Of a stretch of 64,000 bases of DNA, positions 1-19,358 are shown in pieces (the first letter of the stretch is position 1; each line of letters opens with the position of its first letter). Where the stretch lies: the NCBI RefSeq assembly GCF_032444005.1, contig NC_091283.1, positions 37,014,001-37,078,000 on the forward strand. The letters run 5' to 3'. The translations under genes were made by a program, and so were the position numbers. The stretch is from Ranitomeya imitator. Its lineage: Eukaryota. Below the pieces are notes generated by a model, which was given only the letters and a program-made list of their open reading frames with translations, was not told the origin of the DNA and ran no database searches.

Positions 1-1667
1 AGACAAGCGGGTCACCTCCAGCAGAGACGGGGCTGGGAGCAGGACAGGGAGTGTGTGTAGGGGGTGACATGCAGCAGGGCTGAGGGGCTGTGACAGCAGA
101 GAGGAGGGTGACAGGGTGAGGCGCACAGCAGGGCCAGAGTACAGGGAGGGAAGGGGCACTCACCACAGGGAGGACAGGGTCCAAACACGTGACAAGTCCT
201 TGTCCCCAAACCGCAGAAAGCTGGGGGGTCACCCAGCCCAGATCGTCCCTGCTGCTCCCCCCTTCATCCCTCCCCTCTGTCTCTCTCCATCCCTCCAGCA
301 GTCCTGGCTTCCTCCTCCTCCCAGAGCAGCACTCACTGGAAATAGGAGGGAAACCAGCACAGACTCCAATGTATCTCACACACATACCCTGGGGTTGTGC
401 AAGGGTGGCAGTCACATTAGGCCCTGGTGCCCAAGAAGAACTCCAAGCACAAAGAGACAAATACTATTAAAGATCCACAATAGTTGGGGTCCATTTAGTG
501 TTTTTGCATTGGGGCCCACAAGCTTTAAGTTACGCACACAGCACCTCTAGAAGTAGACAACGCTTGCAAGGATGCCCCTCCAGACATGCACACACCTCTA
601 AACACGCATGTACATACGCACCTGTAAACACACATGCGCGCTCCTCTATGGACAAGCACTCTAGACACACAAACCTGCCCCAATGGCCCACTGTGGAAAC
701 ATGCATGCACACCCACCCCTTTGTAGACAAACATGTAAAGACACTGCACACCCCTCTAGAAATGCATACATGCACTTATGCCCCTCTAGACACACACCCA
801 CCATGCCCAAATGCACTTACAGTAGTCTTTTTGCTGTCAGTGTTAGATGCCCCTACAGTCAGTTTCATCTATAGCTCCTACTTTTTGATAGAAGCTTATG
901 ACAAATGTTACCTCTGCACTCACAAACCCCAAAATTCAGTATACCACCTGTACTAAATGCTAATCATCCACATTAGGCCTCAGTTCCACAGCGACCCTCC
1001 ACATAACCCACCTCTACCAAACCACCACCACACTCCCATGATGCCCAACTCACCTTTCACAGACCTCCACACAAGAGCAACTACGCTCATTAACTTTATA
1101 ACCTACCCGGCCTGTAATTAGGGAGGGGGGTGATTACAATTAACCCCTCAATTACTAAGCACGTCTGCACTAGTCTATGGCTAATTCTTGCTCAATAGGA
1201 GTTGTATCCTCTGAAAGCTTATAATCAGGTTACTTTATGCAAGATCCTCCAAAACTGTCCTTGCTCAGGGTTTTCTGTAAGGACACTGCATGGCCACAAA
1301 CAGCGTCCCTATGGGTCTTCGCTATGGTCATCAGGTGATGCAGACATTTTTAATTTTTGCATTTTTGTTTTTTTTTCTCTCTCCCTTTTCAAAGAGCCAT
1401 GACTTTTTTTTTTCATGACCACATCAGGGCTTTATTTTTTGTGCCTTGAGTTGTAGCGTTGAATGACACCAATCACTTTGTCATATAACATGTTGGAAAA
1501 AAATTAGAAAAAAAGTTGTGTGGAGAAATGTTAAAAATCCCTGCAATTTAATCATTGTTTTTTTATTTTTTATTTTACTTATGTCATTCTTTAAGTAGTA
1601 AAAATGACACGATTCTCCAGGTCATTGTGATTATAGCGATACCAAACTTGTACATTTTAATTTCTAA

Positions 1668-2150
1668 GGCTACTTTCACACATCAGGTTTTTTGCATCAG
1701 GCACAATCCGGCGAATGTTGGAAAAAATGGATCCGGCGCAGATTGTGAAAAACTGATGCGACGGATCCGTTTTTTTCGACGGATCTGACTAGCATATTCA
1801 GATAATTGGATAAAAAAAAATTTGGAGCATGCTCAGTTTAAAAAACTGTAATCCGGAGCCGGAATCCGTCATTTTCCGGATCCGGCACCTTCTGGCTCCC
1901 ATAGGCTTCCATTCTAGCAAACAGCCATAAGCGCCAGATTCGGCGCTTTCGGATTTTTCGCCGGAGACAACAAACGTTGCTATGGACGTTTCTTCCAGAA
2001 ACCGGAAACGGCAGAAACGCAATGTCATCCGGCACTAATACAAGTCTATGGGGAAAAAAACGGATCCGGCGGCAACATTCGCCGGATCCGTTTTTTTTAA
2101 ATTTAGCCTGATTGAGCCTGACAGCGAAAACCTCATGTGTGAAAGTAGCC
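1668..2150. mobile_element. PIF/Harbinger-type MITE
   Basis: TIRs GGCTACTTTCACAC...GTGTGAAAGTAGCC, flanked by TAA on both sides; largely palindromic interior. Confidence 0.8.
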
Positions 2151-2187
2151 TAATTTAATGGTAAACAAAATCAGACCTTTTGTCTTT

Positions 2188-2240
<53 letters not shown>

Positions 2241-2734
2241 TATATTGTGTCACTATTTTCTGAGACACATATCTTTTTAATTTATTTTTATTTTTCCATC
2301 GATTTAAACTGTACGCGGGTCTTGGTCTTTGTGTAACAAGTTAAAATGTTTTCATTGGTACCATCTTGGGACAAATATGGCGTTTTGATCGTGTTTTTTC
2401 TTTTTAAATTGCATTTTCTTTAGGCAGTTCAAGATGCAAAAAAAGGGCATTTTTTGTGTTTTTCTTTTTTTTTATCTCTCTTTTGACAGATTAAATAATT
2501 TAATATTTGACAGACTGGACTTTTATGAGCATGACGGTAGCAAATGTTTGCTTCTTTATTATGTTTTTTTTTTTTTTTTTAAATTGGGAAATAGGTTGAG
2601 ATAAACTTTTATATGCTTTAAAATTTGTTAAACATGTTTTGATGAATTTTTAAATGATCATTTACTCCCCATAAGTGGCTTGAACATGTGATTATTTGAT
2701 CGCTTATACTATTAACTGAATTAATCCATTATCC

Positions 2735-2895
2735 CGTAGAATCTAAGTCGGCAAGGACAGGGTCCTCTCCCCTCTGTACCGGTCTGTCATTGTAAATTTG
2801 TTTACTGTAAATGATATCTATAACTCTGTACGTAACCCCTCCTCATGTACAGCACCATGGAATTAATGGTGCTATATAAATTAATAATAATAATA
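2735..2895 (+). mobile_element. LINE 3-prime tail fragment (L2/CR1-like)
   Basis: Ends ...tgtacagcaccatggaattaatggtgctatataaat(taa)n, a typical L2-like terminus. Confidence 0.5.
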
Positions 2896-4087
2896 AAAAC
2901 AATAAAAAAAATGAAGGACCCCACAGAAGAGCCAAGATGGCTGCTGCCTCCGTTACGGCCATCTTGGCTCCCCTATGGGGACTATCATTTTCTCTATATA
3001 TTTCAGCAGGCCCCTGGCAGCCATAACACTCCATTGGCGCTGGTATGTATGCGAACAGGCAAAATTACGAATTAATTTCTGCTTTCAGTGATTAACTGTG
3101 ATGAATAATTACATCCAGGTCTACAAACAGTCATATAGACCAATGGGACCCTTCAAGCCCCCCCTTAACTCCAGTTCCAGGGCTGCGTCTGCAACCCCTG
3201 TACCCATATACAGATGTACTTGAATGATTTACTGTATCACTGCATTTCATGGAGCTGAATTCCATGAAATTATCAAGCTCTTCTCACCTAGAAACATTGT
3301 AGGCCTCACTGATCACAGCCATGTTGCCCATAGCAACCAATTAGAGCTCTCCTTTCATTTCTAAAATAGCTCTGTTAAAATGAAAGCTGCGATATGATTG
3401 GTTGCTATGGGCAACAGCCAGATATTCTTTTTTTTAATAAAAATTGGCCCAATAATTGCCTCTAGAGGAGAATAGCCCCATATATAAGGGGCACCTGAAC
3501 CCTTCATTACTCATAATATCCAGCAGACAGCTTGTAATGCGCTGTTCTTAGACACATCTATATACTCCCATAGTGGCGTGTACACACGATGCCTTATTAT
3601 CTGTATATACCAGATTTCCTGTGACCTTTATTAAAGGGATGTTGCACTTTCCATTTTAATGTGTTTTTTTTCCCTTTGTGGCTGTATATCAATAAACAAG
3701 GGGAATGCTTCAAAATGGGGTCAGACTATGACATATAATTAGATTTTATAGCCACTTTTTACAGCTTAGCTCCATATTTTATGACTCCATGTGTCAGAAT
3801 ATTGTCATATATACTATATATACAAACAGATAGAGGCTAAATAGGGACAGGAAAATTATAAACATTCAAGTGACCCTGTCTCAAAGTAAAGAAATTCAAT
3901 ATAGGTTATAGTGCAAGGAATGGCGATATAGAACATATAGAAGAAAACGTGCCCAAAAAAACGAGTAAAATATAAAACATAATGTTTATTGGCTATACAA
4001 TAAAACACTGCTGAATAGCAAAGTATTATTTAAAAGTAGATGACATGATGTCACAAAATGAGGTGAAAGGAATGATGCACAGTATAA

Positions 4088-5891: not shown

Positions 5892-5957
5892 ATGGCCTCA
5901 TATATTGAATTCGCCTTGATGTTATTATGTGGGACATGTACATTAGGGAAGAGACTG
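5892..5957 (+). CDS. CCN-like gene, exon 1 (signal peptide MASYIEFALMLLCGTCTLGKRL)
   Basis: ATG at 5892, 22 codons with a hydrophobic core, phase-0 GT donor at 5958. The 79-nt intron has a TACTAAT branch-like motif (6004-6010) and AG at 6035-6036, and joins exon 2 in frame. Not in the ORF track; read manually. Confidence 0.7.
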
Positions 5958-6036: not shown

Positions 6037-6241
6037 GGATGTCCTCTAACTTGTGAGTGCTCGGAGGTCCCTACATGTCCCCAAGGAGCAACACCGGTGC
6101 TGGACTCTTGCGGTTGCGGGTGCACAGTTTGTGTCCGAGGCCTTGGCTCTGTATGTGATGGGCTTAGACCGTGTGATGTTGCTAGAAATCTGATGTGCGA
6201 CTATCAGGAGGACCCCAGCTGGCAGCAAGGAGTTTGCAAGG
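6037..6241 (+). CDS. CCN-like gene, exon 2 (IGFBP module, 12 Cys)
   Basis: GCPLTCECSEVPTCPQGATPVLDSCGCGCTVCVRGLGSVCDGLRPCDVARNLMCDYQEDPSWQQGVCK has CCN IGFBP cysteine spacing. Acceptor cttaag; phase-1 donor GTTTGT at 6242 (weak). Confidence 0.9.
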
Positions 6242-7345
6242 GTTTGTCATCTTGTCTTCTATTACCACAGTCAATGAGTTGGTCACCTCAACAATTAGGC
6301 TGGACTATGTTGTCCTGTGCCCATATGTCAGAGAGGAGTGTGGGTCCTAAAGGTGCATTTATGACATATCCATAAATGTTTAAAGGTGAGAATATCCCTT
6401 TAAAGAGATTAAGTCAGCAAAAATGACTGTTTGATATAAAACAAGTGGATGGGAAGGTGCAATGTTGTGTTTGGCCACACCAAGGGTGCACCAAGCGCCT
6501 GTGCTTGGTTTGAACAGTCATTTTGTACTGACAATGTCTTTTAAATACATAAGTCTATTAACTCTATAATGAACACTTTTGCAACTTTTTAATATATATT
6601 GACCCTGATTCATCAATTTTATTTTTTCTAGTGCACTTTTCTAAATGCATCAAAATTCATGTAAAATATTTGATAAATTTGGCACAAATTAAAATATCCC
6701 TTTTCCCCCTTTTGCCATCATTTTGTGCCCTTAATGAAAAGTTGCTTGATCCCTTTAATAAGTTTGAAAAAGTTGCACATCAGTCTTCAAATTGGCAAAT
6801 GAAAAAAAATAGATTTTGTCTCATTGAGGCCAAATTTTCGCAAATGACGAATTAGCCGAGAACATCTGAATAATGACATTTGTAGCCAACCCAAAATATG
6901 GCCAGGACTGAAATAACCAGAGTAAAAATGTTGCAAAAAGCCATCATAAATTCAGTGCTATATTAAAAATGCCTAAAAATGGAACTTTCACAAAAAAAAG
7001 TGTATAAAAAAAAAGTAATAAATTCTTGCGTTTGTGTTCAGCTCTTCCCTGGAAACTGCTTCAGGAAACTCCCTGTTTTGGGGGAAGAATTTTTTTTGCT
7101 AAAGTGGTTTTGAAAAGTTTAGGGAAAAAATGTTTCTTTAGTGTTTTCTTATTTTTTTGCAGCCTCCATAGAATGAAGTGACTGCAAACTTGTAGCTTAA
7201 AGCTGGACATCCCCTTTAAGATTTGACATTGTCTAGTTTGGAGCAGATTCCGTCATGATCCACTTGAAAAAGCTATAAAAAAAAACCTTCTCATATGAAA
7301 AACAAAATGGACCTGACCTATAATTTGTTTTTCACCCCTTTTTAG

Positions 7346-7525
7346 TCCATCATGAGCGACGATCTTGCCTCCACAACGGCAATGAGATTCTCCATGGACG
7401 AGAGTTTGAGCTGGGCTGTGAAAGTTACTGCAAATGTGAGGATGGAAATATCAACTGTGCCCCTCTGTGCCCCCCACTGGAGAAACCCACCAACCCCAAC
7501 TGCAAAGAAATGCGATTAGTGACTG
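7346..7525 (+). CDS. CCN-like gene, exon 3 (VWC module, N-terminal part)
   Basis: After ccctttttag: (V)HHERRSCLHNGNEILHGREFELGCESYCKCEDGNINCAPLCPPLEKPTNPNCKEMRLVT; donor GTAAGA at 7526. Missed by the ORF track. Confidence 0.9.
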
Positions 7526-7860: not shown

Positions 7861-8016
7861 TTCCTGGTCAGTGCTGTGCCCAATGGAGATGTCTGGAGGA
7901 GTCAAGTGGGCTTGAAGACTCAAATGAAACCCGTAATGACTACCCAACTCTAGAAGATAAGTCTACAGATGAAGAGGCAAATATCAGGACCAGAAGAGAT
8001 GCCCCTGATTCAGGTG
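7861..8016 (+). CDS. CCN-like gene, exon 4 (end of VWC plus acidic hinge)
   Basis: After ttctcgtag: (V)PGQCCAQWRCLEESSGLEDSNETRNDYPTLEDKSTDEEANIRTRRDAPDSG. Donor GTGAGA at 8017; an alternative in-phase donor GTGGTG at 8014 would shorten the protein by one residue. Confidence 0.88.
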
Positions 8017-9138
8017 GTGAGATGGATCTGAGTGTGGAGCTTTGTATGGGGGGTGGGGAGCAATATATGGGTGGTGGTGGCAGAGATGGTGCATGGACGT
8101 CCGAGTGACTGCCCAAAAGATGGATGACGTAAGGAAAAGGTTCTATGAATTAGTTAGTACATCTATGCTCCCTAAATACCCGTTTTGCCCCGATCTTTTA
8201 AAAAGGAGGTCAGAAAAGTGCCCTTCAAGTATGTACCAGTCCCTCTACGTCTTATGAGTTACTTGATTTCGCCATCTTATTCTATAAATGCAAAAACTTT
8301 TCTATTGCCCAAGACTTTAAAAGTAGATAGACCTGTTTTTCTAGTCTTGGACAAGATTTGAACCCCATTAAAGGTATTTTATTTGTCTTTAATGGATGAA
8401 TTTTTGGCTAAAAATAATATTGGCAATTGGGTTTCATTCAAAATCTTGCCCAGTTTTCCTCCTACGGCCCTTGTGTTGCATTGTCTTTTGCCGGTTGCAG
8501 AATGTGTTACCCGAGAACCTGTCAGTGAGCTCGTTCTGACAGAATCATTTATACCTCTCATCTTCCTTCTCATCACAGCTCATTTCTGACCAAGGGAAAG
8601 TTATGTTGAACCATTTGGTCCTAAATCTGCCGAGAGGAGCTCAGAAGACCAAAGATAAGAGTTATATAAACTCTCCTGTTAGGAGAAGTTAACTGACAGA
8701 TTCTTGGTTAACGCATTCTTCAGCCATCAATAAGCAAAGGATATTGGAGTTAAAAGGTGTAACTTGTTTTTGTTTTTTTTAAAAGAAAATCCAGATATAA
8801 AAATTATTTTTGCATCGAAATAAAAAAAAATTAAGGTGAAACGCTGAAGGTTTCCATCGCCCTTTAGAAGTGTAATATAAAGGGGCCTATCCAAGTAACA
8901 GGTTCCCAGTATGGATTATCTTACTGGTTTCTCTCAATAAGAAATAAGTAAATGAAGTAAGGATCAGGGTATGTGGATGCCTGAGTTAAAGAGCCAAAAA
9001 TCGGTCTCTCCCATTAGCCAGAAGCTTCAAAAGGGCGTAATTACCGCCCCACCCTCCGGATGAAGTCTTTACCGGAAGGATTTCCATACTTGCTTTTGAC
9101 CGACAATGGCGACATCTCATTTCCAATATGTTCCACAG

Positions 9139-9338
9139 ATCCAGAACAGGATGAGGAGCTGCCGGAAGAACCTCAGCCCTGCAAACCCGATACTGAGTGG
9201 ACACCATGCTCCCGCACGTGTGGCTTTGGGAACTCGCTGCGAATAGTCTACGAGAAGGAAACTTGTATCCCTAAAGCTGAGAAGAGGATGTGTATGATCA
9301 GACCCTGCAAGGGCCAATACCCCAACGCCAACTACACG
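9139..9338 (+). CDS. CCN-like gene, exon 5 (TSP1 module, 6 Cys)
   Basis: After ttccacag: (D)PEQDEELPEEPQPCKPDTEWTPCSRTCGFGNSLRIVYEKETCIPKAEKRMCMIRPCKGQYPNANYT, with the WxxCSxTCG motif; phase-0 donor GTAAGA at 9339. Confidence 0.92.
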
Positions 9339-9880
9339 GTAAGAATAGAGAAGGGTCACAAGCAAATTTGGGCAAGTTCCGTGAAGCCACGTGTATACTG
9401 CGGGCTCCGGAGGTTAGCCCTCTCCATAAACTGCAGGTCCTGACAGTGTCATACAGCCGGCACCTGAGTCTCACTGCTGTCGTTATAGCTAGATTCTGTC
9501 TTCAATTGTGACAGTGGCATTTAAGAGATTGGAATTGGGATACGGGGCATCTCTTCCAACTCTTGCACCATCTCCTCCCCTCCCCCCACAACAACATTAT
9601 TGGGAATCTATGGCGTTTTAATGGCTATCAGGAGCCTACTGAATGCTCCGGTGACTGCACACCTATAAAACCTGTGACTGGACCTCATTGAGGAAAGATA
9701 ATTGTACAATGCACTGCAATTATAACAATATATTGTATGTATGGAAAGTTCCCTTTGGGGACCAACAAAAATCTATTTGTTTTTTAAGAAAAGTTCATAT
9801 CACAGCCCACGTTTACTGTAATGTAAATAAAATATATATATAAAAAATTTACCAAAAAACAAATTTTGTATAAATATATA

Positions 9881-10072
9881 GCGCTGGGGTCCTCAGTTCA
9901 AATCCTATCAAGGACAACATCTGCAAGGAGTTTGTATGTTCTCCCCATGTTTGTGTGGGTTTCCTCCCACATTCCAAAGACCTACTGATGGGGAATTTAT
10001 TTAGATTGTGAGCCCCATTGGGGACAGTGATGATAACGTCTGTAAAGCGCTGCGGGATGAGATAGAGCTATA

Positions 10073-10075
<3 letters not shown>
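9881..10075 (+). mobile_element. 5-prime-truncated SINE, same family as 4701-4922
   Basis: B-box remnant (gttcaaatcc), same core and tail (tgtaaagcgctgcgg...gctatata), running into (TA)n. Confidence 0.72.
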
Positions 10076-10149
<74 letters not shown>

Positions 10150-10212
10150 TGTATACATTTAATATTCCAGTAAAAGTGGGTTGTGATATGAATATATATA
10201 TATATATATATA
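10069..10212. repeat. Interrupted (TA)n microsatellite
   Basis: Two TA runs visible directly; the second is the Tc1 target site. Confidence 0.9.
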
Positions 10213-10791
10213 CAGTACAGACCAAAAGTTTGGACACACCTTCTCATTTAAAGATTTTTCTGTATTTTCATGACTATAAAAATTGTACATTCACACTGAA
10301 GGCATCAAAACTATGAATTAACACATGTGGAATTATATACTTAACAAAAAAATGTGAAACAACTGAAATTATGTCTTATATTCTAGGTTCTTCAAAGTAG
10401 CCACCTTTTATTTTGATGACTGCTTTGCACACTCTTGGCATTCTCTTGATGAGCTTCAAGACGTAGTCACCGGGAATAGTTTTCACTTCATAGGTGTGCC
10501 CTGTCACATTTAATAAGTGGGATTTCTTGCCTTATAAATGGGGTTGGGACCATCAGTTGTGTTGAGCAGAAGTCTGGTGGATACACAGCTGATAGTCCTA
10601 TTGAATAGACTGTTAGAATTTGTATTATGGCAAGAAAAAAGCAGCTAAGTAAAGAAAAACAAGTGTCCATCATTACTTTAAGAAATGAAGGTCAGTCAGT
10701 CCAAAAAATTGGGAAAACTTTGAAAGTGTCCCCAAGTGCAGTGGCAAAAACCATCAAGCGCTTCAAAGAAACTGACTCACATGAGGACCGC

Positions 10792-13700
10792 TGTTGTGAA
10801 TTCTGTGGCCAAGCTCCCTCCTGTGGATGAGAGTGGTACTGCGGCTTCTGAGTTTCCTTCCTCAGGTGATGAGGTTAAGTCGTTAGGTGCTGCTCTATTT
10901 AACTCCACCTGGTGCTTTGATCCTGGCCTCCAGTCAATGTTCTAGTATTGGTCTTGCTTCCTCCTGGATCGTTCCTGTGGCCTGTCTATCCTGCATAAGC
11001 TAAGTTTTGCTTGTGTTATTTTTGTTTGCTATTTTTTCTGTCCAGCTTGCTATATTGGTTTTTCTTGTTTGCTGGAAGCTCTGAGACGCAGAGGGAGCAC
11101 CTCCGTACCGTTAGTCGGTGCGGAGGGTCTTTTTGCCCCTCTGCGTGGTTGTTTGTAGGTTTTTGTGTTGACCGCAAAGCTATCTTTCCTATCCTCGGTC
11201 TATTCAGTAAGTCGGGCCTCACTTTGCTTAATCTATTTCATCTCTGTGTTTGTGTTTTCATCTTACTCACAGTCATTATATGTGGGGGGCTGCCTTTTCC
11301 TTTGGGGAATTTCTCTGAGGCAAGGTAGGCTTATTTTTCTATCTTCAGGGCTAGTTAGTTTCTCAGGCTGTGCCGAGTTGCATAGGGAGCGTTAGGCGCA
11401 ATCCACGGCTGCCTCTAGTGTGGTGTGTTAGGATTAGGGATTGCGGTCAGCAGAGTTCCCACGTCTCAGAGCTCGTCCTTTGTTTTTGGTATTTGTCAGG
11501 TCACTTTGTGTGCTCTGAACTTCAATGTCCATTGTGGTTCTGAATTACCTGTTCATAACAGTACTGAAGGCCCAAAGTACTAATGCTTCTCAATAGAGGG
11601 AAAAGAGAAGTTCTGAGACCATTTTTTTTTCTTTGCACTGTATTCTGTCTTTCTTTTCCCCTTTACATCAGGGTGGTTCAGAACACAGGTGTGGACATGG
11701 ACATTCAAGGTCTGTTCTCTTTGATGGATAATCTCGCTATAAATGTACAGAATATTCAAGATTTAGTGGTTCAGAATCCTATGTTAGAACCTAAAATTCC
11801 TATTCCTGAGTTATTTTCTGGAGATAGAGCTAAGTTTTTGAATTTTAAAAATAATTGTAAACTATTTCTGGCTTTGAAACCTCGCTCCTCTGGTGACCCA
11901 GTTCAACAAGTTAAGATCATTATTTCTTTATTACGTGGCGACCCTCAAGACTGGGCATTTTCCCTTGCGCCAGGAGATCCTGCATTATGTAATATTGATG
12001 CGTTTTTTCTGGCGTTCGGATTGCTGTACGACAAAACAAATTCAGTGGATCAGGCAGAGAAAAATTTGCTGGCTCTGTGTCAGGGTCAGGATGAGATAGA
12101 GATTTATTGTCAGAAGTTTAGAAAGTGGTCCGTGCTCACTCAATGGAATGAATGTGCGCTGGCAGCTATTTTCAGAAAGGGTCTCTCTGAAGCCCTTTAG
12201 TATGTCATGGTGGGATTTCCTATGCCTGCTGGTCTTAATGAGTCTATGTCTTTGGCCATTCAGATCGGTCGGCGCTTGCGCGAGCGTAAATCTGTGCACC
12301 ATTTGGCGGTATTATCTGAGCATGAACCTGAGCCTATGCAGTGCGATAGGACTTTGACCAGAGCTGAAAGGCAGGAACACAGACGTCAGAATGGGCTGTG
12401 TTTCTACTGTGGTGATTCCACTCATGCTATCTCCGATTGTCCCAAGCGCACTAAGCGGTTCGCTAGGTCTGCCACCATTGGTACGGTACAGTCGAAATTT
12501 CTTTTGTCCGTTACTTTGATCTGCTCTCTGTCTTCCTATTCTGTCATGGCATTTGTGGATTCAGGCGCTGCCCTGAATTTGATGGACTTAGAGTTTGCTA
12601 GGCGCTGTGGGTTTGTCTTGGAGCCCTTGCAGTGTCCTATTCCATTGAGAGGAATTGATGCTACGCCTTTGGCCAAGAATAAGCCTCAGTATTGGACCCA
12701 GCTGACCATGTGCATGGCTCCTGCGCACCAGGCGGATATTCGCTTTCTGGTGTTGTATAATCTGCATGATGTGGTCGTGTTGGGGTTGCCATGGCTACAA
12801 GTCCATAACCCAGTATTAGATTGGAATTCAATGTCTGTGTCCAGCTGGGGTTGTCAGGGGGTACATGGTGATGTTCCATTTCTGTCTATCTCATCATCCA
12901 CCCCTTCTGAGGTCCCAGAGTTCTTGTCTGATTACCGGGATGTATTCGATGAGCCCAAGTCCAATGCCCTACCTCCGCATAGGGATTGTGATTGTGCTAT
13001 CGATTTGATTCCTGGTAGTAAGTTTCCTAAGGGTCGACTGTTTAATTTATCTGTACCTGAGCACGCCGCTATGCGGAGTTACGTGAAGAAGTCTTTGGAG
13101 AAGGGTCATATTCGCCCGTCATCGTCGCCATTGGGAGCGGGGTTCTTTTTTGTGGCCAAGAAGGATGGTTTGCTGAGACCTTGTATTGATTACCGCCTTC
13201 TAAATAAAATTACGGTCAAATTTCAGTACCCCTTGCCGCTGCTGTCTGATTTGTTTGCTCGGATTAAGGGGGCCAGTTGGTTCACCAAGATAGATCTTCG
13301 TGGTGCGTATAATCTTGTGTGTATTAAACGGGGCGATGAATGGAAAACAGCATTTAATACGCCCGAAGGCCATTTTGAGTACCTGGTTATGCCATTCGGA
13401 CTTTCTAATGCTCCATCAGTGTTTCAGTCCTTTATGCATGACATCTTCCGAGAGTACCTGGATAAATTCCTGATTGTATACTTGGATGATAGTTTGGTCT
13501 TCTCGGATGATTGGGAGTCTCATGTGAAGCAGGTCAGAATGGTGTTCCAGGTCCTGCGTGCTAATTCTTTGTTTGTGAAGGGGTCAAAGTGTCTCTTTGG
13601 TGTTCAGAAGATTTCATTTTTGGGGTTCATTTTTTCTCCTTCTACTATCGAGATGGACCCTGTTAAAGTTCAGGCTATTTATGATTGGACTCAGCCAACA

Positions 13701-16507
13701 TATCTGAAGAGTCTGCAGAAGTTCCTGGGCTTTGCTAATTTTTATCGTCGCTTCATCGCTAATTTTTCTAGCATTGCTAAATCGTTGACTGATTTAACCA
13801 AGAAGGGTGCTGATGTGGTCAATTGGTCTTCTGCTGCTGTGGAAGCTTTTCAGGAGTTGAAGCGTCGTTTTTCTTCTGCCCCTGTGTTGTGCCAACCAGA
13901 TGTTTCGCTTCCGTTCCAGGTCGAGGTTGATGCTTCCGAGATTGGAGCAGGGGCTGTTTTGTCGCAGAGAAGTTCTGATTGCTCGGTGATGAAACCATGC
14001 GCCTTCTTTTCCAGGAAATTTTCGCCTGCTGAGCGAAATTATGATGTTGGCAATCGAGAGTTGCTAGCCATGAAATGGGCATTTGAGGAGTGGCGTCATT
14101 GGCTTGAAGGAGCTAAGCATCGCGTGGTGGTCTTGACTGATCACAAAAACTTGACTTATCTCGAGTCTGCCAAACGGTTGAATCCTAGACAGGCTCGTTG
14201 GTCGCTGTTTTTCTCCCGTTTTGACTTTGTGGTTTCGTACCTTCCGGGCTCTAAAAATGTGAAGGCGGATGCCCTGTCTAGGAGTTTTGTGCCCGATTCT
14301 CCGGGTTTGCCTGAGCCGGCGGGTATTCTCAAAGAGGGGGTAATTTTGTCTGCCATCTCCCCTGATTTGCGGCGGGTGCTGCAAAAATTTCAGGCTAATA
14401 AACCTGACCGTTGCCCAGCGGAGAAACTGTTTGTCCCTGATAGGTGGACGAATAAAGTTATCTCTGAGGTTCATTGTTCGGTGTTGGCTGGTCATCCTGG
14501 AATCTTTGGTACCAGAGATTTGGTGGCTAGATCCTTTTGGTGGCCGTCTCTGTCGCGGGATGCGCGTTCTTTTGTGCAGTCCTGTGGGATTTGTGCTCGG
14601 GCTAAGCCCTGCTGTTCTCGTGCCAGTGGGTTGCTTTTGCCCTTGCCGGTCCCGAAGAGGCCTTGGACACATATCTCTATGGATTTTATTTTGGATCTCC
14701 CCGTCTCTCAAAGAATGTCGGTCATTTGGGTGGTTTGTGATCGCTTCTTTAAGATGGTCCATTTGGTGCCCTTGTCTAAATTGCCTTCCTCCTCTGATTT
14801 GGTGCCGTTGTTTTTCCAGCATGTGGTTCGTTTACATGGCATTCCAGAGAACATCGTTTCTGACAGAGGTTCCCAGTTTGTTTCGAGGTTTTGGCGAGCC
14901 TTTTGTGCTAGGATGGGCATTGATTTGTCTTTTTCCTCGGCTTTCCATCCTCAGACAAATGGCCAGACTGAACGAACCAATCAGACCTTGGAAACATATC
15001 TGAGATGTTTTGTTTCTGCTGATCAGGATGATTGGGTGTCCTTTTTGCCTTTGGCTGAGTTTGCCCTTAATAATCGGGCCAGCTCGGCTACTTTGGTTTC
15101 GCCGTTTTTCTGCAATTCTGGGTTCCACCCTCGTTTCTCTTCAGGGCAGGTTGAGTCTTCAGACTGTCCTGGTGTGGATACTGTGGTGGATAGGTTGCAG
15201 CAGATTTGGACTCATGTAGTGGACAATCTGACTTTGTCCCAGGAGAAGGCTCAACGTTTTGCTAACCGCAGGCGCTGTGTGGGTCCCCGACTTCGTGTTG
15301 GGGATTTGGTTTGGTTGTCATCTCGTTATATTCCTATGAAGGTTTCCTCTCCTAAATTTAAGCCTCGTTTCATTGGTCCATATAGGATTTCTGAGGTTCT
15401 TAATCCTGTGTCTTTTCTTTTGACTCTTCCAGCTTCTTTTTCCATCCATAACGTGTTCCATAGGTCATTGTTGCGGAGATACGTGGCACCTGTGGTTCCA
15501 TCTATTGATCCTCCTGCTCCGGTTTTGGTTGAAGGGGAATTGGAGTATATAGTGGAGAAGATTTTGGATTCTCATGTTTCGAGACGGAAACTCCAGTATC
15601 TGGTTAAGTGGAAAGGTTATGGTCAGGAAGATAATTCCTGGGTCTTTGCCTCTGATGTCCATGCTGCCGATCTGGTTCGTGCCTTTCATGTGGCTCATCC
15701 TGGTCGGCCTGGGGGCTCTGGTGAGGGTTCGGTGACCCCTCCTCAAGGGGGGGGGTACTGTTGTGAATTCTGTGGCCAAGCTCCCTCTTGTGGATGAGAG
15801 TGGTACTGCGGCTTCTGAGTTTCCTTCCTCAGGTGATGAGGTTAAGTCGTTAGGTGCTGCTCTATTTAACTCCACCTGGTGCTTTGATCCTGGCCTCCAG
15901 TCAATGTTCTAGTATTGGTCTTGCTTCCTCCTGGATCGTTCCTGTGGCCTGTCTATCCTGCATAAGCTAAGTTTTGCTTGTGTTATTTTTGTTTGCTATT
16001 TTTTCTGTCCAGCTTGCTATATTGGTTTTTCTTGTTTGCTGGAAGCTCTGAGACGCAGAGGGAGCACCTCCGTACCGTTAGTCGGTGCGGAGGGTCTTTT
16101 TGCCCCTCTGCGTGGTTGTTTGTAGGTTTTTGTGTTGACCGCAAAGCTATCTTTCCTATCCTCGGTCACTTTGCTTAATCTATTTCATCTCTGTGTTTGT
16201 GTTTTCATCTTACTCACAGTCATTATATGTGGGGGGCTGCCTTTTCCTTTGGGGAATTTCTCTGAGGCAAGGTAGGCTTATTTTTCTATCTTCAGGGCTA
16301 GTTAGTTTCTCAGGCTGTGCCGAGTTGCATAGGGAGCGTTAGGCGCAATCCACGGCTGCCTCTAGTGTGGTGTGTTAGGATTAGGGATTGCGGTCAGCAG
16401 AGTTCCCACGTCTCAGAGCTCGTCCTTTGTTTTTGGTATTTGTCAGGTCACTTTGTGTGCTCTGAACTTCAATGTCCATTGTGGTTCTGAATTACCTGTT
16501 CATAACA
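10792..16507 (+). mobile_element. Full-length Ty3/Gypsy chromovirus-type (sushi-like) LTR retrotransposon
   Basis: LTRs 10792-11560 and 15759-16507, both TG...CA; G-rich PPT just before 15759; flanking duplication GACCGC (10786-10791 and 16508-16513). Confidence 0.97.
11692..15797 (+). pseudogene. gag-pol of the Gypsy element, one frame broken by a TAG at 12198-12200
   Basis: ORFs 11583-12200 and 12207-15797 are in the same frame. Contains capsid-like gag, CCHC knuckle (CFYCGDSTHAISDC), protease (FVDSGA), RT (YLDD), RNase H (VDAS...TDHKNL), integrase (SMDF, SDRG, QTER) and a C-terminal chromodomain (YIVEKILD...YLVKWKGY...NSW). Confidence 0.92.
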
Positions 16508-17549
16508 GACCGCACCAGGAAAGGAAGACCAAGAGTCACCTCTGCTTCTGAGGATAAGTTTATCCGAGTCACCAACCTCAGAAATAGAAGCTCAGATTAG
16601 AGACCAGGTCAATGCCACACAGAGTTCTAGCAGCAGACACATCTCTACAACAACTTTTAAGAGGAGACTTTGTGCAGCAGGCCTTCATGGTAAAATAGCT
16701 GCTAGGAAACCACTGCTAAGGACAGGCAACAAGCAGCAGAGACTTGTTTGGGCTAAAGAACACAAGGAATGGACATTAGACCAGTGGAAATCTGTGCTTT
16801 GGTCTGATGAGTCCAAATTTGAGATCTTTGATTCCAACCACCGTGTCTTTGTGCGACGCAGAAAAGGTGAACGGATGGACTCTACATGCCTAGTTCCCAC
16901 CGTGAAGCATGGAGGTGTGATGGTGTGGGGGTGCTTTGCTGGTGACACTGTTGGAGATTTATTCAAAACTGAAGGTATACTGGACCAGCATGGCTACCAC
17001 AGCATCTTGCAGCGGCATGTTATTCCATCTGGTTTGCGTTTAGTTGGACCATCATTTATTTTTCAACAGGACAATGACCCCAAACACACCTCCAGGCTGT
17101 GTAAGGGCTATTTGACCAAGAAGGAGAGTGATGGGGTGCTACGCCAGATGACCTGGCCTCCACAGTCACCAGACCTGAACCCAATCGAGATGGTTTGGGG
17201 TGAGCTGGACCTCAGAGTGAAGGCAAAAGGGCCAACAAGTGCTAAGCATCTCTGGGAACTCCTTCATGATTGTTGGAAGACCATTCCCGGTGACTACCTC
17301 TTGAAGCTCATCAAGAGAATGCCAAGAGTGTACAAAGCAGTCATCAAAGCAAAAGGTGGCTACCTTCAAAGAACCTAGAATATAAGACATAATTTCAGTT
17401 GTTCACACTTTTTTGTTAAGTATATAATTCCACATGTGCTAATTCATAGTTTTGATGCCTTCAGTGTGAATGTACAATTTTCATAGTCATAAAAATACAG
17501 AAAAATCTTCAAATGAGAAGGTGTGTCCAAACATACTGTACAGTATATA

Positions 17550-19037: not shown

Positions 19038-19358
19038 GTTCTGAAGGCAAACAACGTTTGCAGTCATGTCATGCGCTGGTCCCATCCTTCGCATCTCCGT
19101 TTCCGTGACTGCCTGTCTAGCCGCCCCTTACTCCCCAAATTCTGTGGCCTTTGCTCAGATGGACGTTTCTGTACACCGTTACTGAGTGAGACGCGCCCTG
19201 TGTTATTTCGATGTTCTCACCTCAACCGGAAGGTCACCCGCCAGGTTATGTGGGTGCAGAGGTGTCAGTGCGGGGGTAAGAGAGGAAAGAACAGGAAGAA
19301 GGACAAGGATGCGAGAAAGCCAAGCGAAGAGATGACAAACAGGGTGACAGATGATTAA
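19038..19358 (+). CDS. CCN-like gene, exon 6 (cystine-knot CT module, basic tail, stop)
   Basis: After tcttgtctttcgggcag: VLKANNVCSHVMRWSHPSHLRFRDCLSSRPLLPKFCGLCSDGRFCTPLLSETRPVLFRCSHLNRKVTRQVMWVQRCQCGGKRGKNRKKDKDARKPSEEMTNRVTDD*, with CCN CT motifs (PKFCG.C.DGR.CTP, F.C, V.W...C.C). The six exons total 1128 nt, an open 375-aa frame. Confidence 0.9.
   Translation, partial: VLKANNVCSHVMRWSHPSHLRFRDCLSSRPLLPKFCGLCSDGRFCTPLLSETRPVLFRCSHLNRKVTRQVMWVQRCQCGGKRGKNRKKDKDARKPSEEMTNRVTDD

What the first reader, a model, noticed from the sequence alone, without database searches (positions are those of the whole stretch)
7891..9180. Acidic hinge with an optimal furin-type site (R-T-R-R|D): a CCN that may be processed as a pro-protein
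Seen: the roughly 55-aa hinge between VWC and TSP1 is rich in Asp/Glu, has an N-E-T sequon and contains RTRR at 7986-7997. Known: R-X-K/R-R is the proprotein convertase consensus; mammalian CCN hinges are cut by extracellular proteases, and C-terminal CCN2 fragments are reported to be the more active form. Inference: this paralogue could be split in the secretory pathway into IGFBP-VWC and TSP1-CT halves, with the acidic hinge masking the basic C-terminal tail until cleavage. That would be a built-in activation switch which I do not know from CCN1-6.
Basis: partly seen in the sequence, partly recalled or inferred. Interest (0 to 1): 0.75.

Follow-up and report, generated by a model that had tools for sequence, protein, structure and literature searches.

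The report
Conserved furin-type site in frog CCN hinge
A poison-frog gene for a secreted CCN signalling protein carries, in the floppy acidic linker between its two halves, an R-T-R-R cutting signal that amphibians have kept for hundreds of millions of years, so the protein is probably cut in two inside the cell before secretion, which is not described for any of the six CCN proteins.

Summary
AGG ACC AGA AGA (R-T-R-R) lies at 7986-7997, followed by Asp. It sits in a 54-residue linker (20 Asp/Glu, net charge -15) between the VWC and TSP1 modules of an intact CCN gene of 374-375 residues. Spliced RNA contigs from four studies confirm every exon junction.

The window protein is nearly identical to a Ranitomeya imitator protein. 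The gene belongs to an amphibian clade whose nearest relatives are lungfish, coelacanth and shark "CCN1-like" genes. It is not an orthologue of CCN1-4.

- All nine hyloid frogs keep R-x-R-R followed by Asp or Glu. The three Arg are invariant, P3 varies, and the Arg codons differ synonymously.
- Pelodytes, Rhinophrynus, Hymenochirus and Leptobrachium keep R-x-[KR]-R.
- Salamanders have RRKR.
- Pelobates, Spea and a caecilian have weaker basic motifs.
- None of 69 other CCN hinges examined has R-x-[KR]-R.

AlphaFold2 predicts the linker to be disordered.

The site has also been lost. Mixophyes deleted the motif. Pyxicephalus has no VWC or hinge exon in its genome, and protein models of five other ranoids and of Xenopus lack these modules.

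The "acidic hinge masks the basic tail" idea is not supported. Cleavage itself is inferred, not shown.

The parts
5892..5957 (+). Exon 1: start codon and signal peptide (MASYIEFALMLLCGTCTLGKRL)
   Evidence: Sequence. The joint 5957|6037 (GT..AG, skips 79) is seen in runs X1, X6 and X10. AlphaFold2 predicts helix 2-17. The start agrees with note s1-288111.
6037..6241 (+). Exon 2: IGFBP module with 12 Cys and CGCGC in place of the usual CGCC
   Evidence: Pfam IGFBP E=1.4e-05. The joint 6241|7346 is seen in all four runs.
7346..7525 (+). Exon 3: first part of the VWC module
   Evidence: Pfam VWC E=4.6e-05. The joint 7525|7861 is seen in all four runs.
7861..8013 (+). Exon 4: end of VWC (VPGQCCAQWRC) and the first 40 residues of the acidic hinge. 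An alternative donor at 8016 adds one Gly.
   Evidence: Translation. The joint 8013|9139 is seen in four runs, and 8016|9139 in X1 at depth 136 against 232. P0163 uses the 8016 form.
7923..7931 (+). N-E-T sequon, not conserved in other hyloids
7986..7997 (+). R-T-R-R, residues 193-196: candidate proprotein-convertase site, with the predicted cut after 7997, before Asp 7998-8000
   Evidence: Conservation. Synonymous Arg codons. Lies in the predicted disordered stretch 166-213. The four runs' contigs show no sequence difference here.
9139..9338 (+). Exon 5: the last 14 acidic hinge residues (DPEQDEELPEEPQP) and the TSP1 module
   Evidence: Pfam TSP1_CCN E=1.4e-16, 60.9 bits. The loose end at 9340 continues into the letters of 19040 onwards.
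19038..19358 (+). Exon 6: CT cystine-knot module with 8 instead of 10 Cys, a basic stretch (GGKRGKNRKKDKDARKP, net +7) followed by an acidic end, and stop TAA at 19356-19358
   Evidence: Pfam Cys_knot is weak at 17 bits. Junction from the loose end.

Best explanation
The window holds an intact, transcribed gene for a four-module CCN protein (IGFBP-VWC-hinge-TSP1-CT) of a dendrobatid frog (Ranitomeya). It belongs to a CCN lineage found here in amphibians, with lungfish, coelacanth and shark relatives. The RTRR followed by Asp in its disordered acidic hinge is a selectively maintained proprotein-convertase (furin/PACE4/PC5-type) site. After signal-peptide removal, the roughly 40-kDa precursor would be cut in the trans-Golgi or at the cell surface after Arg196. 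The products would be an acidic N-terminal IGFBP-VWC fragment (about 177 aa, pI about 5) and a basic C-terminal TSP1-CT fragment (178 aa, pI about 9). By analogy with CCN2, the C-terminal fragment would be the signalling part. Shown here: the gene model and its expression, the motif, its conservation at protein level, its rarity in other CCNs, and the predicted disorder. Inferred: that a convertase cuts it, where this happens, and which fragment is active.
For: Spliced contigs from four studies confirm the gene model, and the domains are confirmed by Pfam. The window protein matches Ranitomeya imitator P0163, with 100% identity over the hinge exon. Conservation in hyloids: nine species carry [IT]-R-[TSA]-R-R-[ED]. 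The P4, P2 and P1 Arg are invariant and P3 varies. Only 8 of 54 hinge columns are invariant, and hinge identity to the window outside the motif is 38-60% in the four hyloids compared. Conservation beyond hyloids: Pelodytes IRSRR|D, Rhinophrynus RMRR|E, Hymenochirus RKRKRR|E, Leptobrachium RKRR|S, Pleurodeles and Lissotriton RRKR|V, and additionally RSRR in Lissotriton. In the non-hyloid taxa compared (Leptobrachium and Pleurodeles were not), the rest of the hinge is only 6-20% identical. Among six genomes the Arg codons change synonymously (AGG/CGG/AGA; AGA/AGG; AGA/CGA). In Rhinophrynus the motif sits five codons before the exon end, as in the window. This argues for selection on the protein rather than on a splicing enhancer. 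None of 69 other CCN hinges has R-x-[KR]-R, and the shuffle chance is 1.2%. AlphaFold2 gives residues 166-213 pLDDT below 50 with no secondary structure, so the site is predicted to be accessible. The flanks P14-P7 (DKSTDEEA) and P3'-P6' (PDSD) are hydrophilic, as the 20-residue furin motif requires. Asp at P1' is compatible with cutting: a Val-to-Asp change at P1' makes fibrinogen alpha a furin substrate (PMC3281273). CCN2 is reported to be a pre-pro-protein whose TSP1-CT fragment is the active part (PMC10326224).
Against: No cleavage data exist; the RNA contigs say nothing about protein processing. The site is dispensable in some lineages. The Mixophyes genome lacks the last 15 or so codons of the exon, including the motif. 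The Pyxicephalus locus has no VWC or hinge exon. Five other ranoid or microhylid protein models, and the Xenopus/pipid models, join IGFBP directly to TSP1. Spea (KRSRK), Pelobates (RRTR|E) and the caecilian (RKAR|E, TKRR|V) have only minimal or degraded motifs. The salamander sites have a hydrophobic P1' (Val or Leu), which is less favourable. In the deep taxa the hinge is barely alignable, so positional homology there is an inference and the aligner may have pulled basic clusters together. Acidic residues near the site could lower the efficiency of furin. No ProP or PiTou score could be computed here.
Confidence: 0.6

Rival explanations
1. The conserved basic cluster is a cutting site for extracellular trypsin-like or other matrix proteases (plasmin, kallikreins, matriptase, MMP-linked cascades). 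The protein would then be secreted whole and cut later in the matrix, as described for mammalian CCNs.
For: Mammalian CCN hinges are cut by several extracellular endopeptidases, and no convertase is reported for them (PMC10326224; literature searches). Lineages with degraded motifs (Spea KRSRK, Pelobates RRTR, caecilian TKRR) still keep Arg/Lys clusters, which any trypsin-like enzyme could use.
Against: Conservation follows the convertase pattern exactly: P4, P2 and P1 are Arg while P3 is free. A trypsin-like enzyme needs only P1. A full R-x-[KR]-R recurs in frogs and salamanders.
Confidence: 0.17
2. The motif is conserved for a non-proteolytic reason, such as a short glycosaminoglycan-, receptor- or partner-binding patch, or a charge break in the acidic linker.
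For: Three or four basic residues in a strongly acidic linker could serve as a binding or intramolecular contact point. The CT tail is also basic and is a likely heparin-binding part.
Against: Basic patches usually tolerate Lys/Arg exchange and shifts in position. Here Arg is fixed at P4, P2 and P1 and the acidic P1' is also kept. The motif is lost together with the N-terminal VWC part in several lineages, which fits a role in separating the two halves.
Confidence: 0.12
3. The conservation reflects constraint on the RNA: a purine-rich exonic splicing enhancer 16-27 nt before the tandem donors at 8013/8016.
For: The motif lies close to a weak tandem donor, and both donors are used. AGGACCAGAAGAGA is purine-rich.
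Against: The Arg codons differ between species at synonymous positions, including A-to-C changes (CGG in Dendropsophus, CGA in Bufo), while the amino acid is kept. Salamander and pipid motifs use different residues at P3.
Confidence: 0.04
4. The motif arose by chance in a fast-evolving, low-complexity linker and has no function.
For: The hinge evolves fast, and the motif was lost in Mixophyes, the ranoids and Xenopus without loss of the gene.
Against: The shuffle expectation is 1.2% for one species, and 0 of 69 other CCN hinges have it. It persists in at least 14 species from the three amphibian orders.
Confidence: 0.07

Closest known systems
CCN2/CTGF as a 'matricellular pre-pro-protein' (Kaasboll et al. 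2018, as reviewed in PMC10326224)
   Same: Same four-module architecture with an unstructured hinge between VWC and TSP1. In CCN2, cutting in the hinge releases an IGFBP-VWC fragment and a TSP1-CT fragment, and the latter is the active one.
   Different: CCN2 is cut at non-basic sites (before A181, L184 or L200) by MMPs and other extracellular enzymes. No convertase motif is reported, and none was found in 69 other CCN hinges. The frog protein has a consensus R-X-R-R in an acidic hinge, which would make processing constitutive and intracellular.
Teleost ccn1l1 (cyr61l1), and the 'CCN1-like' genes of coelacanth, lungfish and sawshark
   Same: The coelacanth, lungfish and sawshark genes are the nearest relatives in the tree (93/79 and 96/88 support), apart from CCN1, CCN2, CCN3 and CCN4. 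Teleost ccn1l1 lies close by, but its place is unresolved. The CT with 8 Cys, one disulfide fewer, is shared by ccn1l1, the coelacanth and the lungfish. CGCGC in IGFBP is shared by the coelacanth and the lungfish.
   Different: None of these has R-x-[KR]-R in the hinge; the coelacanth has only FGKRR directly before the first TSP1 Cys. The zebrafish ccn1l1 literature deals with Yap-dependent expression and does not mention processing. One-to-one orthology with ccn1l1 is not resolved.
Classical furin-processed secreted precursors with cystine-knot ligands (pro-VWF, pro-TGF-beta/BMP, pro-PDGF, pro-NGF)
   Same: An N-terminal pro-part, an R-X-K/R-R site in an exposed linker, and a C-terminal cystine-knot-containing ligand. 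VWF is cut by furin after CK-mediated dimerisation (PMC10326224).
   Different: These are unrelated families apart from the shared VWC and CK modules. In them cleavage is demonstrated; here it is inferred from sequence.

Membership tests
CCN family (cellular communication network factors) | N-terminal signal peptide followed by an IGFBP-like module with 12 Cys | tested here: met
   Exon 1 encodes a hydrophobic leader (helix 2-17). Exon 2 matches Pfam IGFBP at E=1.4e-05 and 26.1 bits, just under the 28-bit cut-off when the exon is scanned alone. It has 12 Cys, with CGCGC in place of CGCC.
CCN family (cellular communication network factors) | VWC module with 10 Cys | tested here: met
   Pfam VWC at E=4.6e-05 on the first of the two VWC exons. 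Ten Cys across exons 3 and 4. An extra intron splits the module, and RNA confirms this.
CCN family (cellular communication network factors) | CCN-type TSP1 module | tested here: met
   PF19035 TSP1_CCN at E=1.4e-16 and 60.9 bits, against a cut-off of 27.
CCN family (cellular communication network factors) | C-terminal cystine-knot (CT) module with 10 Cys | tested here: inconclusive
   Pfam Cys_knot scores only 17 bits against a cut-off of 24. There are 8 Cys instead of 10. The same reduced pattern occurs in ccn1l1, the coelacanth and the lungfish. The module is homologous but a variant.
Orthologue of one of CCN1-CCN6 | Groups inside a CCN1-6 clade in a tree | tested here: not met
   The amphibian clade (100/99) is sister to lungfish, coelacanth and then sawshark 'CCN1-like' genes, and is separate from the CCN1, CCN2, CCN3 and CCN4 clades. 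CCN5 was represented only by three fish models that their sources name 'CCN5-like' or 'CCN2-like'. CCN6 was absent from the tree. Public records name the amphibian proteins inconsistently as 1-, 2-, 3- or 5-like.
Proprotein-convertase (furin-type) substrate | R-X-K/R-R motif with a non-hydrophobic P1' | tested here: met
   R193-T-R-R196 followed by Asp.
Proprotein-convertase (furin-type) substrate | The site is exposed to the secretory pathway and lies in an accessible, flexible, hydrophilic segment | tested here: met
   A signal peptide is present. AlphaFold2 gives pLDDT below 50 and no secondary structure for residues 166-213. The flanks are hydrophilic (criteria from PMC3281273). This is a prediction only.
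Proprotein-convertase (furin-type) substrate | The motif is conserved in orthologues | tested here: met
   Losses in Mixophyes, the ranoids and Xenopus are noted.
Proprotein-convertase (furin-type) substrate | Demonstrated convertase-dependent cleavage at the site | not testable with these tools
   This needs expression, inhibitor or mutant work, or N-terminal sequencing.

The most novel reading that the evidence does not exclude
Amphibians keep a seventh CCN lineage, not found in amniotes in these searches, that is a true pro-protein. A convertase site fixed early in amphibian evolution splits it constitutively into an IGFBP-VWC pro-part and a TSP1-CT ligand. The pro-part and its site then behave as one evolutionary module. 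They are amplified in spadefoot-type frogs (up to seven VWC units), and the VWC, hinge and site are absent together in ranoids and Xenopus. This would be the first CCN with built-in intracellular activation and a natural test of the CCN pre-pro-protein model.
Probability: 0.4. Interest if true: 0.65.

Novelty: new variant of a known kind. Interest (0 to 1): 0.55.

Why it matters
The CCN field is debating whether CCN proteins act as whole matricellular adaptors or as pro-proteins whose TSP1-CT fragment is the real ligand (PMC10326224). The activating proteases of the mammalian CCNs are heterogeneous and extracellular.

A CCN in which evolution has installed and kept a consensus convertase site at exactly the VWC/TSP1 boundary would be independent evolutionary support for the pro-protein model. 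Natural variants have deleted the N-terminal VWC part and the site together, which adds to that support.

It would also give a clean experimental handle: one defined site, one class of enzyme, and natural uncleavable and VWC-less forms for comparison.

The finding also records a CCN lineage, with an 8-Cys cystine knot, outside the CCN1-4 clades (CCN5 poorly and CCN6 not sampled in the tree). Public records name it inconsistently as CCN1-, 2-, 3- or 5-like, CYR61-like or kielin/chordin-like.

Tried and rejected
1. ProP and PiTou scoring are not available here. I applied only the published qualitative criteria.

2. The look-up of encoding contigs returned nothing for Hyla sarda P0164, Engystomops P0167 or Xenopus laevis P0171. 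The codon comparison therefore rests on the window plus five other genomes that carry the motif. Whether the Xenopus genome still holds a hinge exon is unknown.

3. Four literature searches for furin with CCN, or for the CCN2 pro-protein work, found no report of a convertase-cut CCN hinge; the only "furin" hit in a WISP review was an author's name. The ccn1l1 search and the amphibian CCN paralogue search found nothing on processing either. The library lacks most subscription journals, so this is weak evidence of absence.

4. The hinge-masks-tail model could not be tested structurally. AlphaFold2 gives both segments pLDDT below 50, and charge bookkeeping argues against a simple release.

5. The N-E-T sequon is not a conserved feature and was rejected as one.

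6. The splicing-enhancer explanation was rejected because of the synonymous Arg codon changes.

7. The spliced protein was never typed into a tool. It was built only inside scripts, and the near-identical public protein P0163 was used for folding and alignment.

8. The search of earlier findings by words gave nothing.

9. The window contains no N runs.

Full report
**1. What is in the sequence**

The window is vertebrate DNA with frog-type repeats and no N runs. On the + strand lies a six-exon CCN gene:

| Exon | Coordinates | Content |
|---|---|---|
| 1 | 5892-5957 | signal peptide |
| 2 | 6037-6241 | IGFBP module |
| 3 | 7346-7525 | first part of VWC |
| 4 | 7861-8013 | end of VWC and most of the hinge |
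| 5 | 9139-9338 | end of the hinge and TSP1 |
| 6 | 19038-19358 | CT module, basic tail, stop at 19356-19358 |

Pfam finds IGFBP, VWC, TSP1_CCN (E=1.4e-16) and a weak Cys_knot on the separate exons.

Logan contigs of four runs from four studies carry the spliced form. They show GT..AG joints at 5957|6037, 6241|7346, 7525|7861 and 8013|9139. A loose end at 9340 continues into the letters of exon 6. One run also uses a tandem donor at 8016, which adds one Gly.

The product has 374 residues, or 375 with the second donor.

**2. The observation**

R-T-R-R is encoded at 7986-7997 and is followed by Asp. The hinge between the last VWC Cys and the first TSP1 Cys has 54 residues, of which 20 are Asp or Glu, and its net charge is -15. 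The N-E-T sequon is at 7923-7931.

Shuffling the hinge gives R-x-[KR]-R in 1.2% of trials. That set includes proteins named by their sources as CCN1, CCN2, CCN3, CCN4 and ccn1l1, the coelacanth, lungfish and shark relatives, and many unnamed representatives.

**3. Which gene this is**

An exhaustive search with the CT exon found three close cluster representatives and then a steep drop in score. Word and profile searches then recovered about 35 amphibian proteins.

One of them, P0163 from Ranitomeya imitator, is nearly identical to the window product. Over the hinge exon the identity is 100%. The window therefore comes from Ranitomeya or a very close relative.

Public names for the amphibian proteins are inconsistent: CCN1-, 2-, 3- or 5-like, CYR61-like and kielin/chordin-like.

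In a maximum-likelihood tree the amphibian proteins form a clade with 100/99 support. That clade is sister to lungfish and coelacanth "CCN1-like" genes, then to a sawshark "CCN1-like" gene. It stands apart from the CCN1, CCN2, CCN3 and CCN4 clades. Teleost ccn1l1 lies close by, but its position is unresolved. CCN5 was represented only by three fish models that their sources name CCN5-like or CCN2-like, and CCN6 was not in the tree.

The lineage shares two marks:
- A CT module with 8 instead of 10 Cys. Note s1-288325 says the same.
- CGCGC in the IGFBP module, except in teleost ccn1l1.

No amniote member turned up in these searches. That is an absence within the limits of the tools used.

**4. 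Conservation of the site**

| Group | Species | Motif |
|---|---|---|
| Hyloids | Ranitomeya, Anomaloglossus | IRTRR\|D |
| Hyloids | Rhinoderma, Hyla, Bufo | IRTRR\|E |
| Hyloids | Engystomops, a Logan hyloid | IRSRR\|E |
| Hyloids | Dendropsophus | TRSRR\|E |
| Hyloids | Eleutherodactylus | IRARR\|E |
| Other frogs | Pelodytes | IRSRR\|D |
| Other frogs | Rhinophrynus | RMRR\|E |
| Other frogs | Hymenochirus | RKRKRR\|E |
| Other frogs | Leptobrachium | RKRR\|S |
| Other frogs | Pelobates | KRRTR\|E |
| Other frogs | Spea | KRSRK |
| Salamanders | Pleurodeles, Lissotriton | TRRKR\|V (Lissotriton also RSRR\|L) |
| Caecilian | Geotrypetes | RRKAR\|E and TKRR\|V |

Among the nine hyloids only 8 of 54 hinge columns are invariant. 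Three of the eight are the P4, P2 and P1 arginines, while P3 varies. Outside the motif, hinge identity to the window is 38-60% in the four hyloids compared. It is 6-20% in the non-hyloid taxa compared.

Five other genomes that keep the motif were compared with the window. Among the six, the Arg codons differ synonymously: AGG/CGG/AGA at P4, AGA/AGG at P2 and AGA/CGA at P1. In Rhinophrynus the motif sits five codons before the exon end, as it does in the window. This points to selection on the protein and not on a splicing enhancer. It also supports positional homology across anurans.

For the salamanders and the caecilian the homology is an inference from a poor alignment.

**5. Losses**

- The Mixophyes genome lacks the last 15 or so codons of the exon, including the motif.
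- In Pyxicephalus, the 1.86-kb intron between the IGFBP and TSP1 exons holds no VWC or hinge exon.
- Protein models of Staurois, Hyperolius, Mantella, Nanorana and Gastrophryne join IGFBP directly to the TSP1 exon. So do Pseudophryne isoform X2 and the Xenopus/pipid models.
- Hymenochirus keeps the hinge exon with RKRKRR although the first VWC exon is missing from its partial model.

The site is therefore ancient and widely kept, but it is not indispensable. The VWC part tends to disappear with it, although Mixophyes keeps its VWC.

**6. Accessibility and quality of the site**

AlphaFold2 was run on P0163 with a 20-sequence alignment. Residues 166-213, which contain the site at 193-196, have pLDDT below 50 and no secondary structure. 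The tail 353-375 is the same.

The site has Arg at P1, P2 and P4 and Asp at P1'. Its flanks are hydrophilic (P14-P7 DKSTDEEA; P3'-P6' PDSD). This fits the 20-residue furin motif. In fibrinogen alpha, a change of P1' from Val to Asp creates a furin substrate (PMC3281273).

I could not run ProP or PiTou.

**7. Mechanism**

The best reading (about 0.6) is that a furin-type convertase cuts after Arg196 in the secretory pathway. The products would be an acidic IGFBP-VWC fragment of about 177 residues and a basic TSP1-CT fragment of 178 residues.

This parallels the CCN2 pre-pro-protein model, in which the TSP1-CT fragment is the active part (PMC10326224). In CCN2 the known cuts are at non-basic sites and are made by extracellular enzymes.

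- The cut leaves 19 strongly acidic residues (net -9) on the C-terminal fragment.
- The ranoid and Xenopus/pipid models keep the basic tail although they lack the hinge exon.
- The structure model shows no ordered contact between hinge and tail.

The rival readings are cutting by an extracellular trypsin-like enzyme (0.17), a non-proteolytic binding patch (0.12), chance (0.07) and RNA-level constraint (0.04).

**8. Novelty**

Four searches of the paper library on furin and CCN proteins or on the CCN2 pro-protein work found no report of a convertase site in a CCN hinge. The ccn1l1 and amphibian-paralogue searches found nothing on the processing of ccn1l1-type proteins. The library is incomplete.

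I class the finding as a new variant of a known kind: a CCN with a conserved built-in convertase site. Cleavage remains to be shown.
Noticed in passing
window 10791-16490 approx. (LTRs start at 10791 and 15758; long ORF 12201-15794): A Ty3/gypsy-type LTR retrotransposon lies in intron 5 of the CCN gene. It has an uninterrupted pol-type reading frame of about 1,198 codons. Its LTRs are 100% identical over the 300-nt blocks compared, so the insertion is very recent. It sits inside a Tc1/mariner transposase remnant, whose pieces are at 10627-10830 and 16506-17375. This is observation only.
   Followed up: partly
window 8013/8016 donors: Tandem GT donors 3 nt apart are both used in run X1 (depth 232 against 136). 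This gives isoforms with and without one Gly, seven residues after the RTRR. The public Ranitomeya protein P0163 is the +Gly form.
   Followed up: yes
window 9203: The window has A, while the contigs of all four runs have G (ACA to ACG, a synonymous Thr change in the TSP1 module). The window also differs from P0163 by Pro against Leu in EELPEE. Both are probably polymorphisms.
   Followed up: partly
window 6468-6534 (intron 2): A short repeat of about 65 nt attracts very many unrelated contigs in all four runs, with summed depth up to about 3,000. It is a high-copy element that is widely present in transcripts.
   Followed up: no
P0159 (Pelodytes ibericus, 910 aa), P0003 (Pelobates fuscus, 847 aa), P0110; P0115, P0129, P0019: The VWC module, with its linker, is tandemly multiplied in this CCN lineage. 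There are about seven copies in Pelodytes, five in Pelobates fuscus, and two in the salamanders and the caecilian. For this reason some records are named 'kielin/chordin-like'.
   Followed up: partly
L001 (Pyxicephalus adspersus) 1600-3457; P0117, P0001, P0119, P0120, P0122, P0169, P0170, P0171: Ranoid frogs and Xenopus-type pipids have a three-module form (IGFBP-TSP1-CT) of this CCN. The Pyxicephalus locus shows no VWC or hinge exon. A 7-residue match, SCLANGN against SCLHNGN (E=8.4), may or may not be a relic.
   Followed up: partly
window 7942-7950 (N-D-Y-P) and hyloid orthologues: A Tyr in a strongly acidic context (D-x-Y-P-x-x-D-D) is kept in most hyloid hinges. It is a possible tyrosine-sulfation site.
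   Followed up: no
window 19038-19358: The CT module has 8 Cys: the second Cys of the usual CC pair and the last Cys are both missing. The same pattern is seen in carp ccn1l1, the coelacanth and the lungfish, so it is an old trait of this lineage and not a defect of this gene.
   Followed up: partly
window 10060-10150: A long (AT)n/(TA)n microsatellite in intron 5, next to a frog SINE-like repeat.
   Followed up: no
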